DNA of 64,000 nucleotides from Trichoplax adhaerens. Lineage: Eukaryota > Animalia > Placozoa. The DNA lies in NCBI RefSeq assembly GCF_000150275.1, contig NW_002060953.1, positions 1,714,465 through 1,778,464 of the forward strand, in the 5' to 3' direction. A model generated the notes under the pieces. That model was not told where the DNA came from, searched no databases, and saw only the letters and a list, made by a program, of their open reading frames with translations. Positions within the stretch are counted from its first letter, which is position 1. The number at the start of each line of letters is the position of its first letter. The position numbers were made by a program, and so were the translations under genes. Positions 575 to 51,341 of this stretch are shown one piece after another.

Positions 575-869
575 CTTCAGTGTCCAATTGCAGTTTTGCT
601 CCGAAAGCTTTGACAACGTTGACATGGTGCTGTTTTAGCAAGCTACAGAAAGTATAGAAATCCTCATTTGAACGTTGTTCTTGTAAGATTTCCAATAGCC
701 TTCCGTTCATATCTTCAACATGAGTTAATTTTTCTATATCGATAATATCTCTACTACTTAGAATTTTTTTAACTTTCAATTTTGTAAATAACTCTTTGAT
801 TGGAACAATTTTGATAAATTCTTCTGCGTATTTATCAAGATTAGCTTTAATAATGTCACTTAATTCCAT
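575..869 (-). CDS. CARD-encoding first coding exon of a gene that probably continues beyond the left window edge
   Basis: MELSDIIKANLDKYAEEFIKIVPIKELFTKLKVKKILSSRDIIDIEKLTHVEDMNGRLLEILQEQRSNEDFYTFCSLL has the CARD pattern and closely resembles the CARDs at 17398 and 34526. Acceptor ttacag at 910-911; phase-1 donor g|gtaag at 574, so the ORF-track tail (513-574) is probably intron read-through. Confidence 0.85.
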
Positions 870-1562
870 ATTTTACTTGCAATTGTAACTTCAAGACCGA
901 AGATTTAATCTGTAAGAAAATATGTTTATAGCTATTACTTTTCTGAAATTAGTTTGCGGATATTTTCGAAATTAAATTAGATTGACGTAACTAGGCTGCT
1001 TTAAATATAAAAATATAAGTAAAGCAATATTCTCAACAAGTATTGAAACTGTTAATAGAAAATTCTATCAAAAATAGGTACGCGCACACTTTATTTTATG
1101 CAATAGACTTGAAATCTAAACGAGTAATGCGAATATTTAGTTATGAAATGAGTTACAAGACAACTTTTCTACAATTACATCTAGTTTCTCCCCATCAAAA
1201 TATTCATCATATCTATAACTATATAACAAAGCTAAAGTTCATTCTGCCGAGTTTTAAGTAAAGAGATCGTTCTCACACTATCATAAACAGTCACTATAAT
1301 AGTTAAAACTACATACAAGATATAATATAGCAATCTGATGTTAAGATAGAGATAAGATGAATTAGTAGAAGTATAAAAGAAATGTAGCGGAAGTAAGGTA
1401 GTTGTGAAACTTATATTCCTTTACTCTGAGTCTCTGATATTAATTTACTAGGTTATTCTGTTATAGTAATTTCATGAAAAGATTTTAAATAGTCTAATTA
1501 TGTCATCTGCTATCCATTATGAACGTAAAGTATTACAGTAGCAAGCCAGGTGAAAATCTTAC

Positions 1563-1714
1563 TTAGGAAACAACCGGATTAAATTCTTTCTTGCTGCCGA
1601 ATGTCTTGTACAGTTGAAAAATAGAAACCTGCGGCTCTTCTAAAAAACCACGGCCTTTTAGTGATGTAAGCGTCTGCGTAGACTTCATTAACAATAGATT
1701 GCGGTTTCTTTATT
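1563..1714 (-). other. Probable non-coding 5' exon of the 575-869 CARD gene
   Basis: Bounded by acceptor tttag (1715-1716) and donor gtaag (1562). Shares short motifs with the exon-like block at 18465-18632 upstream of the paralogous CARD gene. Confidence 0.45.
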
Positions 1715-46658: not shown

Positions 46659-47105
46659 TGTTGCCGTCATTATTAAAAATCCGTCACTTTACAAAATGTC
46701 TAGTGATTTTGCAAAATGCCTAGTGATTTTACCAAATGCCTAGTGATTTTGCAAAATGCCTAGTGATTTTACCAAATGCCTAGTGATTTTGTAAAATGCC
46801 TAGTGATTTTACCAAATGCCTAGTGATTTTGCAAAATGCCTAGTGATTTTACCAAATGCCTAGTGATTTTGCAAAATGCCTAGTGATTTTACCAAGTGCC
46901 CAATGATTTTGCAAAATGCCTAGTGATTTTACCCAATGCCTAATGATTTTGTAAAATGCCTAGTGATTTTACCAAATGCCTAATGATTTTGTAAAATGCA
47001 AAGTGATTTTACCAAATGCCTAATGATTTTGCAAAATGCCTAGTGATTTTACCAAATGCCTAGTGATTTTGTAAAATGACGGATTTTTGAATAAATTCGG
47101 TAACA
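46659..47105. mobile_element. Non-autonomous TIR element filled with a 20-bp minisatellite (alternating 40-bp dimer)
   Basis: Left end tgttgccg..ttattaaaaatccgtcactttacaaaat pairs with right end attttgtaaaatgacggatttttgaataa..cggtaaca. CCAC occurs on both flanks (46655-46658, 47106-47109). The interior alternates ctagtgattttgcaaaatgc and ctagtgattttaccaaatgc. Confidence 0.8.
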
Positions 47106-49369
47106 CCACTGCTGCTAAAAATTGAACCGTTAAACTATCCAGCAAGCAAGTTCGACATAGTCGATAGAAAGTTTATTTTACATGTTGTTAGAGCATGTAA
47201 AGTAGCCAACGATGCAGCAGATTGGACATTGCAGCAAGCATGATTAATTAGAAAGGTTGTTCAGTGTTTGGCCAACATTTGCTTGCTACTGTATGAAGAT
47301 AGCTGACAAGTAGGCAACGACTAATGTCGCTAAAATTGCTCAGACTGGAGGAAAAGTACAACATGAGCTGGTACTGTTTTTACTGTCCTCTTCTAATGCT
47401 GTATCAATGTCTTGAAATGCTGTGATTCGATTGGATTCAGTTTAGGCAATCGGAATTGGATTGGATTGAATTCGGGAAATCGATATGGAACCCTACCCCA
47501 GACTGTACACATCCACTTTAAACGCAATTTGCGAAAGAATGATACGTCCTACGTGAATTTGAAGGGCAGAATCATGTCAATGAACTCATTTTCTATCCTT
47601 CCGATATCAAATTTGTTCAAAGAAAGCTTCATTTTTGAGTGTTTATACTGTAAAATACTTTTCAAGAGTGCATTCTTGCAGTGTGTTCTTGTTGTGTTTC
47701 ACTTTCTATCGCTGTGCATGCTAACTTGACGGAATAGGAATGGCGGTATCTCGGCCTTCTCTAATAAGAGAAATACTCTTCCAAGTCCATTTCTCAGTTT
47801 ACAAGGCCAAATGGCAGTCGTGCTGTATTCTGGTCAGCGCTATGCTGCAAGATAGACCAGCAATACGATAAGTGGAACGAGAGCGATGACTGAGCAAGGA
47901 TGCTCTGCCGATGCATACAGTAATATATATGATATATATTCTCCCTGTTATATCTTATTTCAGAAGACTGTAGCCGTTGTCAAGTCGAAAACGATTAAGA
48001 TTGACTTCATAATCAACAGGAGTAGCCAGCCACGCCATTTAATGAGGGAATGCCTAGGGATTTGAACGATGGTATACGACAACTTTCATCCTATGAGGTC
48101 TTTAGTGTTTTTCTAAAAAAAAGGCAGCACTGTACAAAGACCATTTCTATATCGACTCTGCAGCATGTTAAATGGCATGCCTATTGCCACTTGGCCGCAA
48201 CGTTAGACATGGATCATGAGCATTGGCCATCGTAGCTAATGTAATTTTACGTACATGTCTTGAAATCAATTTTATGAACTGCAAAGCCACCACTCAACCT
48301 ATTCGATTCAACGCTTATCAGATATATATATACGTAGAAGAGCATGAATATGAAGAGTGGATGACATGGGCCAATAAAAGAAATACAGACAGAAGTTGCA
48401 AGTTGTTTTCTACACTAATCTATTTTGAAATGAAATGATCAACTCTGAAAATGATCGTACCCATCAATTTACTCTTTCAACCTCTACTCGTTGGTTCATA
48501 TAGCTTTCAACATCGGTTAGTAAGAAGGAATTCAACTTTTCATCGGCCCACCGTATTGGTAGAGGCCCCTTGTAGCGCTCAAATTGGACAAGAAGGAAAA
48601 CAATTTGAACTCAGTATAGAAGATAATTTAATAGACAAATCAAAATCGCTCTTAACAACAAATTGAATTCTATCGATTAATTAATCTCACTATCATCAAC
48701 GAGACATCATAACATCAAATTGGAACGGTACTAAAAGAAAAACTTATGTATGCGCTGCATTGATTATGGCCGATAGATAATTAAGAATAATCAATGGCAA
48801 AGGAAGAACATTTGTAAGTTTTTTTCACACAGTTGGCTAAAATCAATGCTATCATATTGAATATTACATGCCTGTCGGCTGTCATTGATTGATGATATAC
48901 GTATAGTATCATAGTAGTTGTAGAACTTGGAAATTGATCTAGTTTGCATCCTATTGGATTGACAGCTTGCAAGCAGTTTTAAACTTCCAGACCACTACTA
49001 CAGCATCATTAGCAGGGCTAGCAGCTAAGTCTTACATGAATATCGATCGTTCTTAATTTCTACTACTCCTTTCACATTTATACCTATCCCGACCTAATAC
49101 TTAACAGCGCTAGAACAGTACAATAACCGATTAGAATACTTAAAGTATACAAAGAGTTTTACGATAAGAGAACAAACTAAAAGACTGTAGTATAGCCTAG
49201 AGCCCTAGACATTGATTTAAAACGCTCATTAAAATAGCATCATGATAGCATGGGACTAAGGTACTCATCAATAGTCTAAACGTTAGAGGATAATATTAAT
49301 AACAGTAGAACAAAACTTGATAAATGCTGAACAAGCTTTTTTTATTTACTGTTGGTAGAATTAATTCGA

Positions 49370-51341
49370 TCACTTCCTCGAATTCTTTGCTTTTCTAATC
49401 GATTCGTATAATTCATTTAATTTCTTTTCTAATTCAGCCGTTGCTTGTTTATTGACGAGGATTTTGATATATAAATCTCCAGTAATATAGATATAGAAAT
49501 CTGTTCCTGTAGATGAGACTAACTCGCCCTGTGGTCTTATATCTTCAATAATGACTGCTACCATATCCTTTTTTTTGTCACTGGCGTAGCTGATTTCCGA
49601 ATAGCAATTCTTTGATTCGATATATTTCTTACTCATAAACGGCACAAACACCTACAGAAGATCATAGTGAAGTAATATCAAATTAGCTGTCAGAATGAAA
49701 CAATTATCCCAAGGTATTAATCTGCTTCTGATTTAGCCTACAAGTTCGGAAATTTAATAACGCTGTATAACACCTATAACTGCATCATATCCGAAGAAAA
49801 CCTAAATACCAAGCATCCATTCTTAAACATAGTGAATGAATATCAGCTTAAAATATTACTGTAAGAATTATCTTTACTTCAGTGTAACTTGAAATGAATA
49901 CTATTCAGCTAGTAAATATTTTCGTTATCATTATACCACCTTCAATTGATGCTATCTCAGAAGATTTATAATTAAAGTTATTCCTTTTACTGCTTCTACT
50001 TGAGAAAACGTAGCTGAAGAATGCAGTAAGTAAAAGTTAACTGAATAAATAAATATGAAGTCTTATTCGATATATCCTTTATTTGGTCATATAGTCGAAT
50101 AATATCTATTCCAATAGCATGGTAGTATGCTAAGTGGTTGCGATATTCAGCCGGTTATCTGCTATTATAGTGAAGCAGCAGATACAACTGCTCAATAAAA
50201 ATAAGTTTTTATACCCTAGACGCTAGGATAGCTTTAGAGATTTCCGGTAAAAGTTTCATTCCCCCACTGAGTTGCTCGTTGTCTATCCAACAGGTAATTC
50301 CTTTACTTTCCAGATATTTTTTTACATGAATGACGTCTTCCTTATTATCCCAGGAGTGGCTAAGAAATACATCTAACAAACAGATAATATCTCTTTTACT
50401 GGATACTCTCAAGCTAACGAAATATCCATATTTCTTAATCTCAGCCTTTATCGAATTCTATCAGTATACCGTAACTATATTTTGTTTGATCATTAACTGC
50501 AGATGCCTGATCAGTGGTATCCTTTCCAGCTAATAGTAAAAGAATGTGATAAGGAATACAGAAAGCATTTATTAAAACGAAAAATGGAAGTAAAAATATG
50601 AGCTAATTATAAGTGATGTACTGTCAATTTCTGGTTGAGTAGGTTAGTAATTTATCCTTGTAGCCAAAATTTGAATAAGAACACGTAGTCAATCGCTACA
50701 TAAGTCGATAATTCTATCACTTTATTCTACTTCCACAAGCTAATGAGAACAAAAAATACCGTAAAAGAAACTAAATTTATAGGTAAACAGATACGGTACA
50801 GTATGCATTCACGCAATAGCTGACAAGATCACTTATATTAACATTTTATATCTGTGTAAATAAATGTAAATTAATTATTGTACTAACCTTCATGAGAAAT
50901 GGGAGCTACTGACGTAACTGGGGTGGTTACAACTATATCAAAAAGAAAATTACCATATTCAGAGGAAATAGGGCTACCAAACGGCCTATTCTGTATCATT
51001 AAGCTTTTCAGAATCATCTTACCAGGACTAGGTTGGACACCTGAAATTGCATTCTTAGCTTGATTTTCCAATAAATTTCCTAATTCTTGGGCATTGTCAG
51101 TATCGTGATTCTTAAGTGCTTCACAAAATTTTAAAAAATCTCTATCTCCTCTTTTCTCCAAAATTTTATATAATTCAAAATTTTTTTCGTTATCATCCTG
51201 GATTCTTCTTAGTTTCGATGCTTCAGAACTGGACATAACACCATCAGCTGCTAGTTCATTAAGGATGTCATTTGTTGGCGTGTCATTACATATTCGCTTC
51301 ATGTTTTTTGTCAATACCTTTTTAATTTCTTTAGACAACAT
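49370..51341 (-). CDS. CARD-TIR protein, about 287 aa (TIR_2/SARM-like TIR)
   Basis: Exons 51341-51023 (CARD), 50932-50888, 50529-50470, 50372-50215 and 49651-49370 join in frame (864 nt). TIR: YDVFLSHSWDNKEDV...GITCWIDNEQLSGG..L.PEISKAILASRVFVPFMSKKYIESKNCYSEISYA. Confidence 0.88.

What the first reader, a model, noticed from the sequence alone, without database searches (positions are those of the whole stretch)
575..51341. Co-oriented death-fold gene cluster resembling a complete signalosome: Roco scaffold, CARD-DD adaptor, CARD-TIR enzyme, DD-tethered effector, CARD-only decoy
Seen: six minus-strand genes in about 51 kb all encode CARD and/or DD domains in complementary combinations (5 CARDs, 4 DDs), with no caspase or NACHT/NB-ARC gene recognised in the window. 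Known: death folds assemble by homotypic CARD-CARD and DD-DD contacts, as in the PIDDosome, Myddosome and inflammasome; Roc-COR modules are nucleotide-regulated dimerisers. Inference: this could be a clustered innate-immune/cell-death system in which a Roco GTPase replaces the STAND ATPase as nucleator and recruits a TIR NADase and a helical effector directly or via the adaptor.
Basis: partly seen in the sequence, partly recalled or inferred. Interest (0 to 1): 0.9.

Follow-up and report, generated by a model that had tools for sequence, protein, structure and literature searches.

The report
Placozoan death-fold gene array
This stretch of the Trichoplax adhaerens genome really carries six same-strand genes built from CARD, Death, Roc-COR and TIR domains, but they are one piece of a larger array made by local gene duplication and exon swapping, one of several such arrays in this genome, and nothing yet shows that they work together as one signalling machine.

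Summary
Observation confirmed. The window is Trichoplax adhaerens scaffold DNA. On its minus strand lie 5 CARD and 4 Death exons, one Roc-COR exon and a split TIR_2 domain. They form six genes, five of them annotated: TRIADDRAFT_59577, 59578, a CARD-DD gene, 59581 and a CARD-TIR gene. No caspase, NACHT or NB-ARC lies in the window. The assembly gap is non-coding; the sister-lineage (H2) contig bridges it collinearly.

Interpretation only partly supported. The array runs on for at least 117 kb, with 13 or more CARD exons, 9 Death exons, 2 Roco genes and 2 TIR loci. Its CARD and Death exons have their closest relatives inside the array. Whole-gene DNA duplicates are visible. The death-fold exon junctions checked are all phase 1, and the Death exon of 59578 has a different history from the gene body.

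Genome-wide there are at least 110 Death, 52 CARD-like, 49 COR and 43 NB-ARC hits, half of them in similar mixed arrays. The CARD of the CARD-TIR gene resembles NB-ARC-linked CARDs more than the Roco CARD.

Roco genes with CARD and Death domains in Trichoplax are published (Civiero 2014), and this scan met related arrays on other DNA of this genome.

New here:
- a placozoan-only helical module shared by Death-domain and NB-ARC proteins;
- a Roco-Death-TIR fusion locus;
- fast protein change in the CARD-TIR gene.

Binding and co-expression remain untested.

The parts
389..869 (-). CARD-only gene TRIADDRAFT_59577 / TrispH2_011162 (133 aa). CARD exon 575-869 with a phase-1 donor GTAAGG; 57-nt exon 389-445. 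The 47-nt last exon lies about 1.3 kb beyond the window start.
   Evidence: Pfam CARD E 5e-5. Protein P0053/P0054. Exon threading on the H2 locus. No H1/H2 differences in the CARD exon.
6006..9917 (-). Helical-module + Death-domain gene, TRIADDRAFT_59578. The H1 model has 551 aa and stops at 7279; the H2 ortholog RDD36911.1 has 656 aa and includes the DD. Exons: 9319-9917 (N-terminal all-helical module), 8558-8650, 7308-8239 (beta-hairpin plus long coiled coil), DD exon 6336-6585 (entered by a phase-1 junction), tail exon about 6009-6096.
   Evidence: (Death E 6e-11). The module has no Pfam, PDB or Atlas relative. Its DD is 49% identical to the neighbouring CARD-DD gene's DD but only 33% over 52 aa to the DD of its body-paralog.
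15994..17398 (-). CRADD-like CARD-DD adaptor gene (214 aa in the H2 annotation). CARD exon 17107-17398; DD exon ends at the stop at 15994-15996. The internal splice sites are not settled.
   Evidence: Pfam CARD E 3e-4 and Death E 1e-10. The H2 gene call runs from the CARD ATG to the DD stop. A whole-gene duplicate lies at window +83189..+84769 (72.5% DNA identity).
34221..34526 (-). Unannotated intact CARD ORF (101 codons), 62-64% identical to the CARD of the CARD-DD gene. No downstream partner exon was found.
   Evidence: Pfam CARD E 2e-5. Paralogy. Not in the protein collections.
35440..35489 (.). Assembly gap. Intergenic; corresponds to 71 bp in Trichoplax sp. H2. The flanks are collinear.
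38969..44040 (-). Roco gene TRIADDRAFT_59581 (1013 aa): CARD-DD-Roc-COR-DD. H1-model exons: 43728-44040 (CARD), 43540-43590, 42855-43094 (DD1), 42654-42713, 40215-42278 (Roc-COR with a Cys-rich CxxC...CxxC stretch), 39658-39696, 38972-39243 (DD2). All six introns are phase 1. There is no repeat-type sensor domain.
   Evidence: The P-loop GPENVGKT and DFGGQ motifs were read in P0001. H1/H2 coding differences: 2 nonsynonymous and 2 synonymous in 2880 nt.
49370..51341 (-). CARD-TIR gene (290 aa in H2), one of the 'MyD88-like' CARD-TIR proteins of Kamm 2019. CARD exon 51023-51341 (phase-1 donor GTAAGA). TIR_2 domain split over about 50215-50372 and 49373-49651.
   Evidence: The best solved relatives of the first TIR exon are bacterial-type TIRs (PdTIR 3H16, Cat1, AbTIR). 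H1 versus H2: 17 nonsynonymous and 2 synonymous differences in 753 nt.

Best explanation
The window shows the middle of a co-oriented array of death-fold genes, at least 117 kb long, on a Trichoplax adhaerens scaffold.

How the array arose (shown): repeated local duplication of whole genes and of single domain exons, with exons recombined at phase-1 junctions. This produced a graded set of architectures: CARD only, CARD-DD, helical module-DD, CARD-DD-Roc-COR-DD and CARD-TIR. Co-orientation and clustering are a birth mark of tandem duplication. They are not evidence of an operon-like unit.

What the products do (inferred from what is known of CARD, DD, Roc-COR and TIR domains): they are adaptors and effectors in a genome-wide placozoan death-fold network. 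Its upstream switches are the roughly 50 Roco GTPases and the roughly 40 NB-ARC ATPases.
- Nucleotide-controlled self-association of a switch protein clusters its CARD or DD.
- Homotypic CARD-CARD and DD-DD polymerisation then recruits CARD-DD bridges.
- It also recruits a TIR_2 domain that keeps the glutamate needed for NAD+ cleavage, and a placozoan-specific helical module that also sits at the N-terminus of NB-ARC proteins.

Members of this array may well meet each other, but they are no more tied to one another than to paralogs elsewhere.
For: Identity: TRIADDRAFT_59577/59578/59581 and their H2 orthologs.

Extent: CARD, DD, TIR and a second Roco gene (TRIADDRAFT_64193, plus strand, window +70.5..+74.2 kb) flank the window.

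Local duplication:
- CARD 17090 is 69/66/64% identical to three array CARDs; the next hit genome-wide is 47%.
- DD 6326 is 48-49% identical to two array DDs; the next is 40-42%.
- DNA duplicates: 15918-17487 matches +83189..+84769, 49264-50627 matches +76304..+77577, and +91405..+93610 matches +95849..+98050 at 92%.

Exon shuffling:
- All six introns of the H1 model of 59581 are phase 1.
- The CARD-only gene has phase-1/1 introns, and the DD exon of 59578 is entered in phase 1.
- The 59578 body is 40-46% identical to TRIADDRAFT_61448/61449, but its DD is the local type.

Genome-wide context: at least 110 DD, 52 CARD-like, 49 COR-A, 13 TIR_2 and 43 NB-ARC hits. Of the 239 hits counted, 124 lie in 25 clusters, including three other large arrays, two of them mixed in domain type.

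The genes are real: exons differ 0.52% between H1 and H2 against 1.33% for non-exon DNA. The Roco gene has 4 changes in 2880 coding nt.

Functional links: COR-A, Death and TIR_2 lie in order on one strand on C1410. The helical module lies next to or fused with NB-ARC at four or more loci.

Literature: at least 17 ROCO genes with CARD/DD/TPR in T. adhaerens (PMC4104024). CARD-TIR 'MyD88-like' proteins and 39 NB-ARC genes in H2 (PMC6321704).
Against: No expression, splice-junction or interaction data could be obtained.

The array is not one clade. It holds at least three CARD subfamilies, each with closer relatives elsewhere than to each other. Some assembly of unlike genes, or old dispersal from the array, must also have happened, and selection for linkage cannot be excluded.

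Exon-limited DNA similarity at about 70% cannot by itself separate exon-only copying from old whole-gene duplication with decayed introns.

The H2 model of the Roco gene uses phase-0 junctions at two introns, so the 'all phase 1' statement depends on which annotation is right.
Confidence: 0.7

Rival explanations
1. The six genes are a dedicated, co-functional cell-death or immune module. The Roco GTPase (59581) is the nucleator in place of a STAND ATPase. Through its CARD and two DDs it recruits the CARD-TIR NADase and the helical-module-DD effector, either directly or via the CARD-DD adaptor, with the CARD-only proteins acting as decoys.
For: The architectures are complementary and all confirmed. 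The Roco gene and the CARD-TIR gene are neighbours 5 kb apart, also in H2. A likely Roco-DD-TIR fusion exists on C1410. Roco DD1 is 39% identical to the DD of 59578. The 69% identity between the CARD-only protein and the CARD of the CARD-DD gene fits a decoy of that adaptor. The Roco, CARD and DD exons are under strong purifying selection.
Against: The array continues far beyond the window, with more CARD-DD genes, a second Roco gene and a TIR copy with an early stop. Comparable mixed arrays occur elsewhere. The CARD-TIR CARD is closer to NB-ARC-linked CARDs than to the Roco CARD. The paralogous CARD-TIR gene on C1376 has no Roco or DD neighbour on its 272-kb contig at the thresholds used. This Roco has no sensor-type repeats, unlike the TPR-Roco genes of the same genome. 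STAND genes are abundant, not replaced.
Confidence: 0.18
2. The array is mostly evolutionary debris: decaying duplicates and chance ORFs with little present function.
For: One CARD ORF (34224-34526) is unannotated and has no partner exon. The TIR copy at +76.3..+77.6 kb has an early stop. Repeats, satellites and a reverse-transcriptase remnant fill the gaps between genes.
Against: Five genes have intact ORFs in both H1 and H2. Coding DNA is 2.6-fold more conserved than non-coding DNA. Most death-fold exons show zero or one change between the lineages.
Confidence: 0.05

Closest known systems
Trichoplax adhaerens ROCO family (Civiero et al. 2014, PMC4104024)
   Same: TRIADDRAFT_59581 is a Roc-COR protein flanked by CARD and Death domains, as that paper describes for the family. 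The Roc-COR part is one large exon, as at most of the 49 COR loci found here.
   Different: The paper lists at least 17 genes; six-frame search finds at least 49 COR-A loci. This member has no TPR or LRR array and carries three death folds (CARD, DD, DD). The paper does not treat genomic arrays or neighbours.
DAPK1 (human Roco protein: kinase-ankyrin-Roc-COR-Death)
   Same: Roc-COR followed by a C-terminal Death domain; a link to cell death.
   Different: No kinase, calmodulin site or ankyrin repeats here. Extra N-terminal CARD and DD. Only distant Roc-COR similarity; orthology was not tested.
CRADD/RAIDD and the PIDDosome
   Same: A roughly 200-aa CARD-DD bridge protein. The array's CARD profile matches the RAIDD CARD (E 1.5e-4).
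   Different: The CED-3 and Apaf-1 CARDs match as well or better. There are five or more CARD-DD paralogs in this array alone. No PIDD or CARD-caspase lies nearby. Binding partners are unknown.
MyD88 / SARM1 / bacterial TIR_2 NADases
   Same: A death-fold plus TIR adaptor layout like MyD88; Kamm 2019 calls it MyD88-like. The TIR is of the TIR_2 type, with bacterial TIRs (some of them NADases) as the best solved matches, and keeps a Glu in the C-Y-x-E motif.
   Different: CARD instead of DD, so it is not MyD88. It lacks the ARM and SAM domains of SARM1. NADase activity is untested.
Lineage-specific, exon-shuffled arrays of death-fold/TIR/NLR genes in invertebrates (amphioxus, sea urchin, cnidarians; from my own knowledge) and the TPR-Roc-COR arrays noted by this scan on other pieces of this genome
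   Same: Tandem arrays, domain exons swapped between neighbours, many novel domain combinations.
   Different: This array is made mainly of small adaptors. It includes a placozoan-only helical module that is shared with NB-ARC proteins.

Membership tests
ROCO (Roc-COR) GTPases | Roc GTPase domain with intact P-loop and DxxG motifs | tested here: met
   PF08477 E 1.2e-10. GPENVGKT and DFGGQ were read in P0001. A roughly 110-aa insert lies between the two motifs.
ROCO (Roc-COR) GTPases | COR domain directly after Roc in the same chain | tested here: met
   COR-A scores 35.1 bits on the ORF alone (cut-off 35.3) and 36.6 bits, over the cut-off, in the genome search. Same 709-aa ORF. 30-40% identity to annotated Trichoplax Roco proteins over 93-96% of its length.
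ROCO (Roc-COR) GTPases | Nucleotide-dependent dimerisation or switching | not testable with these tools
   Needs biochemistry.
CRADD/RAIDD-type adaptor | [quoted passage not shown] | tested here: met
   Pfam on the two exons. The H2 gene call of 214 aa starts at the CARD ATG and ends at the DD stop.
CRADD/RAIDD-type adaptor | Orthology to CRADD, and bridging of PIDD to a CARD-caspase | tested here: inconclusive
   The CARD profile hits RAIDD at E 1.5e-4, but CED-3 at 3e-8 and Apaf-1 at 1.7e-4. Caspase genes lie on other contigs. Binding cannot be tested here.
TIR NAD+ hydrolases (SARM1 / bacterial TIR_2 type) | TIR_2-type fold | tested here: met
   PF13676 E 1.1e-9 and 1.5e-4 on the two exons. 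The best solved matches are PdTIR, Cat1 and AbTIR.
TIR NAD+ hydrolases (SARM1 / bacterial TIR_2 type) | Catalytic glutamate | tested here: inconclusive
   The Glu in SKNCYSEIS lines up by hand with the Glu of PdTIR ...KKEWPQKE (fragment shown). It is kept in H2 and in three paralogs. No tool alignment spans the exon junction, and TLR-type TIRs, to my knowledge, can keep a Glu at this position without enzyme activity.
MyD88 | Death domain joined to TIR | tested here: not met
   The death fold is a CARD.
STAND/NLR-type signalosome | NACHT or NB-ARC NTPase in the system | tested here: not met
   No hit in the window or its flanks. The nearest on this contig lie more than 360 kb away.
Co-functional gene cluster (dedicated signalosome) | Members bind each other | not testable with these tools
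   One complex prediction was run and returned no verdict; it counts neither way.
Co-functional gene cluster (dedicated signalosome) | Co-expression of the members | not testable with these tools
Co-functional gene cluster (dedicated signalosome) | The neighbourhood is kept when members are duplicated or in other lineages | tested here: not met
   The CARD-TIR paralog on C1376 stands alone. Arrays differ in composition. Synteny with H2 is uninformative at about 99% DNA identity.

The most novel reading that the evidence does not exclude
Death-fold-bearing Roco GTPases are a third class of animal intracellular nucleators beside NLR/Apaf-1 and RLR proteins. This array would then be a linked 'supergene' supplying one such switch (59581) with its own bridge (CARD-DD), regulators (CARD-only), a fast-evolving TIR NADase, and a previously undescribed helical death-executing module that NB-ARC proteins also use.
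Probability: 0.15. Interest if true: 0.8.

Novelty: new member of a known kind. Interest (0 to 1): 0.4.

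Why it matters
Placozoans are among the simplest animals, and their intracellular defence and cell-death wiring is known only from domain catalogues. This locus shows how that wiring grows: small death-fold adaptors are copied in place and their domain exons are re-dealt.

It also points to three testable items:
- Roco GTPases as a large switch family (about 50 loci, not the at least 17 published) working alongside NB-ARC proteins.
- A placozoan-only helical module attached to either a Death domain or an NB-ARC, which is the position an executioner domain would hold.
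- A CARD-TIR gene whose protein changes faster than the surrounding non-coding DNA between two sister lineages, as arms-race genes do.

None of this overturns current views. It refines a published picture.

Tried and rejected
Gene models therefore rest on the H1 and H2 annotations and on splice-site threading.

2. Fold of the helical module.
- AlphaFold2 on the 656-aa H2 ortholog with 7 sequences: pLDDT 36.
- AlphaFold2 on the 206-aa N-terminal part with 8 paralogs: pLDDT 50, pTM 0.50.
- Foldseek against PDB: nothing at E <= 0.001.
- VIA-align wide: best Z 5.9, within the noise for helical models.
- ESM Atlas: no usable hit.
- Profile against PDB sequences: only the DD part matches, to FADD.
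- hhalign against the array's CARD profile: probability 0.2, so it is not a recognisable death fold.
- Hydropathy: only a moderately hydrophobic, uncharged stretch at residues 56-79. This is too weak to call a membrane hairpin.

3. Complex prediction of the Roco CARD with the CARD-TIR CARD: no verdict. It is not evidence either way.

4. The 108-bp repeat upstream of the Roco gene (44503-45964) was tested as a possible hidden TPR sensor array. No Pfam match on either strand, so I treat it as a satellite.

5. A partner exon downstream of CARD 34221: no DD or other domain was found among the minus-strand ORFs of at least 60 codons between 17.5 and 34.2 kb that were scanned.

6. Exact-product look-ups for the CARD 34221 ORF and for a read-through CARD-only model: not on record.

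7. Full splice enumeration of the CARD-TIR gene timed out. For the CARD-DD gene, the only two-intron GT-AG solution that gives 214 aa has weak sites, so the internal junctions of these two genes are left open.

8. Joined (spliced) protein models were not sent to any search tool.

9. Paper search for the locus tags found nothing.

Full report
WHAT THE DNA IS. The window is G000:C1404:1714465-1778464 of a 105.6-Mb, 1414-contig assembly with about 31% G+C. The 709-aa open frame at 40162-42288 is 97% identical to TRIADDRAFT_59581 of Trichoplax adhaerens. This is therefore placozoan nuclear DNA with short exons and GT-AG introns.

CHECK OF THE OBSERVATION. I cut the window into stop-to-stop frames and scanned the minus-strand ones against Pfam.
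- CARD: 516-872, 17090-17515, 34221-34532, 50886-51359.
- Death: 6326-6616, 15997-16293, 38972-39247, 42784-43110.
- Roc and COR-A: both in 40162-42288.
- TIR_2: split over 50212-50457 and 49373-49651.
- The fifth CARD is the first exon of the Roco gene (43729-44040). It misses Pfam alone, but matches the array's other CARDs at E 3e-18 and 6e-15 and aligns with them throughout. The profile of all eleven array CARDs finds CED-3, RAIDD and Apaf-1 CARDs among solved structures.
- No NB-ARC, NACHT or caspase hit lies in the window.
The count of five CARDs and four DDs on one strand is correct.

THE ASSEMBLY GAP. The Trichoplax sp. H2 contig NOWV01000396.1 (locus L009) matches window 35727-35490 at 100%. 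It then has 71 bp of its own, then matches window 35438-34857 at 99.7%. The two sides of the gap are collinear and in the same orientation. The gap stands for about 71 bp and lies between genes, 0.9 kb upstream of the CARD ATG at 34526. Window 35728-37127 is absent from H2; it is an indel next to a repeat copy.

GENE MODELS.
(1) CARD-only: TRIADDRAFT_59577 / TrispH2_011162, 133 aa. CARD exon 575-869, then exons of 57 nt and 47 nt; both introns are phase 1. The last exon lies about 1.3 kb outside the window.
(2) TRIADDRAFT_59578. The H1 model (551 aa) runs into a stop at 7279. The H2 ortholog RDD36911.1 (656 aa) uses the donor at 7308 and the acceptor at 6585, and so adds the Death exon and a short tail. 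The same sites and frames exist in the window.
(3) CARD-DD: the H2 gene call of 214 aa starts at the CARD ATG (window 17398) and ends at the DD stop.
(4) An intact 101-codon CARD ORF at 34224-34526, unannotated in either lineage.
(5) TRIADDRAFT_59581, 1013 aa, CARD-DD-Roc-COR-DD. It has seven exons, and all six introns are phase 1 in the H1 model. The H2 model differs at two junctions.
(6) CARD-TIR, 290 aa in H2.
Spliced models were never sent to search tools; exons were searched singly by reference.

ARE THE GENES REAL? Between H1 and H2 the exons differ at 0.52% of sites and the remaining aligned DNA at 1.33%. The Roco gene has four changes in 2880 coding nt, and most death-fold exons have none. 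That is purifying selection. The exception is the CARD-TIR gene, with 17 nonsynonymous and 2 synonymous differences in 753 nt. The local non-coding rate is 1.36%, which predicts about 8 nonsynonymous changes (Poisson P 0.003). The nonsynonymous:synonymous ratio alone is not significant (P 0.13). The motif glutamate is kept.

THE ARRAY IS LARGER THAN THE WINDOW. I fetched 30 kb to the left and 40 kb to the right and compared all frames. The minus strand from about -19 kb to +98 kb carries at least 13 CARD and 9 Death exons. These include:
- further CARD-DD genes at -5.3/-6.7 kb and +84.4/+83.3 kb, and a 92%-identical tandem pair at +93/+91.6 and +97.5/+96 kb;
- a second TIR locus at +76.3..+77.6 kb with an early stop;
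- on the plus strand, TRIADDRAFT_64193 (Roc-COR-CARD) at +70.5..+74.2 kb. Its N-terminus is cut off by a 6.3-kb run of N that starts right after the window.

HOW THE ARRAY AROSE. Genome-wide, the closest relatives of CARD 17090 are the three other 'group A' CARDs of the array (69, 66, 64%); the next hit is 47%. The closest relatives of DD 6326 are the two DDs of the array's CARD-DD genes (48-49%); the next is 40-42%. Whole-gene DNA duplicates are still alignable.

The death-fold exons sit between phase-1 junctions, the classic condition for exon shuffling. There is one clear case. The body of 59578 is 40-46% identical to TRIADDRAFT_61448 and 61449 on another contig. Its DD, however, is 49% identical (88 bits) to the DD of the neighbouring CARD-DD gene and only 33% over 52 residues (25 bits) to the DD of 61448. 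Earlier follow-ups of this scan on other pieces of the same genome reached the same kind of conclusion for TPR-Roc-COR genes. I tested it independently on different genes.

The array is not one clade, though. The CARD of the CARD-TIR gene is nearest to the +93/+97 kb CARDs (38-40%), then to CARDs that sit beside NB-ARC exons on other contigs (38-42%). The Roco CARD reaches only 30%.

GENOME-WIDE CONTEXT. Six-frame family searches give at least 110 Death, 24 CARD (52 with a local CARD as query), 49 COR-A, 13 TIR_2, 43 NB-ARC, 9 NACHT and 11 caspase hits. Linking the Death, CARD, COR-A, TIR_2 and NB-ARC hits (239 in all) within 30 kb puts 124 of them into 25 clusters. There are large arrays on C1398 (16 hits: D, R, C, T), C1392 (11) and C1404:924-969 kb (10), besides this one. 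Half of the COR loci have a DD or CARD within 4 kb. Most COR hits lie in single 700-790-aa frames like the one here.

It is largely met.

WHAT SPEAKS FOR A FUNCTIONAL LINK ANYWAY.
(a) On C1410, COR-A, Death and a strong TIR_2 (84 bits) follow each other on one strand within 3.3 kb. If this is one gene, it is a Roco-DD-TIR fusion, which argues that these three domains work in one pathway.
(b) The N-terminal module of 59578, about 450 aa, has only five relatives in 1.8 billion representative proteins, all placozoan. It recurs at 11 loci in this genome. In TRIADDRAFT_61449 and TrispH2_003549 it is fused to NB-ARC. At C1332, C1363 and C1381 it lies a few kb upstream of NB-ARC exons on the same strand. 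An N-terminal domain that is exchangeable between a STAND ATPase and a Death-domain adaptor is where effector domains sit in NLR-type proteins. Its fold could not be assigned.
(c) The TIR is of the TIR_2 kind, with bacterial TIRs, some of them NADases, as the best solved relatives. It keeps a Glu in the C-Y-x-E motif. I aligned this by hand with the PdTIR fragment shown, so I count it as a lead and not as a test.

MOST LIKELY MECHANISM.
Shown: the array is a product of tandem duplication plus exon shuffling, and most of its genes are under purifying selection.
Inferred from the known behaviour of the domain families:
- Roc-COR proteins act as nucleotide-regulated dimerisers.
- CARD and DD polymerise homotypically, as in the apoptosome, PIDDosome and Myddosome.
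- Some TIR domains cleave NAD+ when clustered.
On this basis, a Roco or NB-ARC switch clusters its death fold. CARD-DD proteins bridge CARD-type and DD-type assemblies. CARD-only proteins cap or seed them. The TIR and helical-module proteins are the outputs. The partners of any one protein are as likely to be encoded elsewhere as next door.

COMPARISON WITH WHAT IS KNOWN. Civiero et al. 2014 (PMC4104024) reported at least 17 Trichoplax ROCO genes with CARD, Death, TPR and LRR domains. A 2024 brown-alga paper (PMC11378527) repeats this and discusses ROCOs as candidate immune receptors. Kamm et al. 2019 (PMC6321704) listed two CARD-TIR 'MyD88-like' proteins, 39 NB-ARC genes and many Apaf-1 paralogs in H2, and do not mention Roc. 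None of the locus tags appears in the searchable literature. The family and the domain combinations are therefore known. This array, the size of the Roco family, the helical module and the fusion locus have not been described, as far as the searched library shows.

VERDICT. The specific reading as a complete signalosome in which Roco replaces STAND is possible but is not favoured by the tests that could be run. I file it as a new member of a known kind: a lineage-specific, exon-shuffled array of death-fold genes. Interest is moderate.

Noticed in passing
G000:C1410:4252004-4254959 (locus L010:2121-5454, minus strand): COR-A (40 bits), Death (50 bits) and a strong TIR_2 (84 bits) follow each other on one strand within 3.3 kb. 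This is probably a multi-exon Roco-DD-TIR fusion gene, unlike the single-exon Roco family.
   Followed up: partly
window 49373-51341 versus L009:3199-5176: The CARD-TIR gene differs between T. adhaerens and Trichoplax sp. H2 by 17 nonsynonymous and 2 synonymous changes in 753 nt, more than the surrounding non-coding DNA (1.36%). Every other gene of the array is nearly unchanged. This could be diversifying selection or relaxed constraint.
   Followed up: partly
window 9319-9917 and 7308-8239; paralogs at C1392:319871, C1392:328357, C1382:41748, C1332:13476, C1372:89516, C1404:2233977, C1363:12598, C1381:28705: A placozoan-only module (a helical N-domain of about 200 aa, a small beta part with the motif YGFRQLSFF, and a long coiled coil). 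It is joined either to a Death domain or to NB-ARC. No fold or family could be assigned.
   Followed up: partly
just right of the window: +64001..+70317 (run of N) and +70476..+74176 (plus strand): TRIADDRAFT_64193 (Roc-COR-CARD, 40% identical to the window's Roco) lies 6.5 kb past the window end in the opposite orientation. Its annotated protein starts inside the P-loop because a 6.3-kb run of N precedes it, so its true N-terminus is unknown.
   Followed up: partly
window 44503-45964 and 46688-47078: A 108-bp satellite (about 13 units, 80-94% alike, open on both strands but with no Pfam match) and a 20/40-bp minisatellite lie between the Roco and CARD-TIR genes. Copy number differs in H2.
   Followed up: partly
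window 24332-31802: A tandem duplication of about 3.8 kb (81-85% identity) with plus-strand ORFs that match no Pfam family. It fills much of the space between the CARD-DD gene and the CARD ORF at 34221.
   Followed up: no
window 12806-13099 and 37100-37393; 35728-37127: Inverted copies of a repeat (93% identity). Next to the second copy, 1.4 kb of the window is absent from the H2 contig; this indel borders the assembly gap.
   Followed up: partly
window 55773-56354 (minus) and +102013..+103014: A rhodopsin-type GPCR exon (7tm_1, E 2.6e-6, just under the Pfam cut-off) with a 41%-identical paralog at the far end of the array. Together with the TIR copies this hints at an old segmental duplication of a TIR-GPCR block.
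   Followed up: no
window 59738-60256 (minus); 52271-53532 versus 62741-63999: A reverse-transcriptase remnant (RVT_1, E 1.5e-27) and a 1.26-kb inverted repeat pair at 97% identity; other interspersed repeats are shared with the flanks. Described only.
   Followed up: no
window 38972-44040 versus L009:10001-15072: The H1 and H2 annotations of the Roco gene disagree on the ends of exons 3-5 (phase 1/1 against phase 0/0), giving different linkers of about 35 aa between DD1 and the P-loop. Read evidence is needed to settle this.
   Followed up: partly
window about 40220-40420 (C-terminal end of the Roc-COR exon): A Cys-rich CxxC...CxxC stretch between COR and the last Death domain. It is also present in TRIADDRAFT_64193 and could be a zinc ribbon.
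   Followed up: no
G000:C1414:12748125-12752524 (minus strand): The closest out-of-array relative (47%) of the CRADD-like CARD lies just downstream of a COR-A and a Death hit on the same strand, so it is probably the tail of a DD-Roc-COR-CARD gene. This suggests which Roco proteins the array's CARD-DD adaptors might meet.
   Followed up: no
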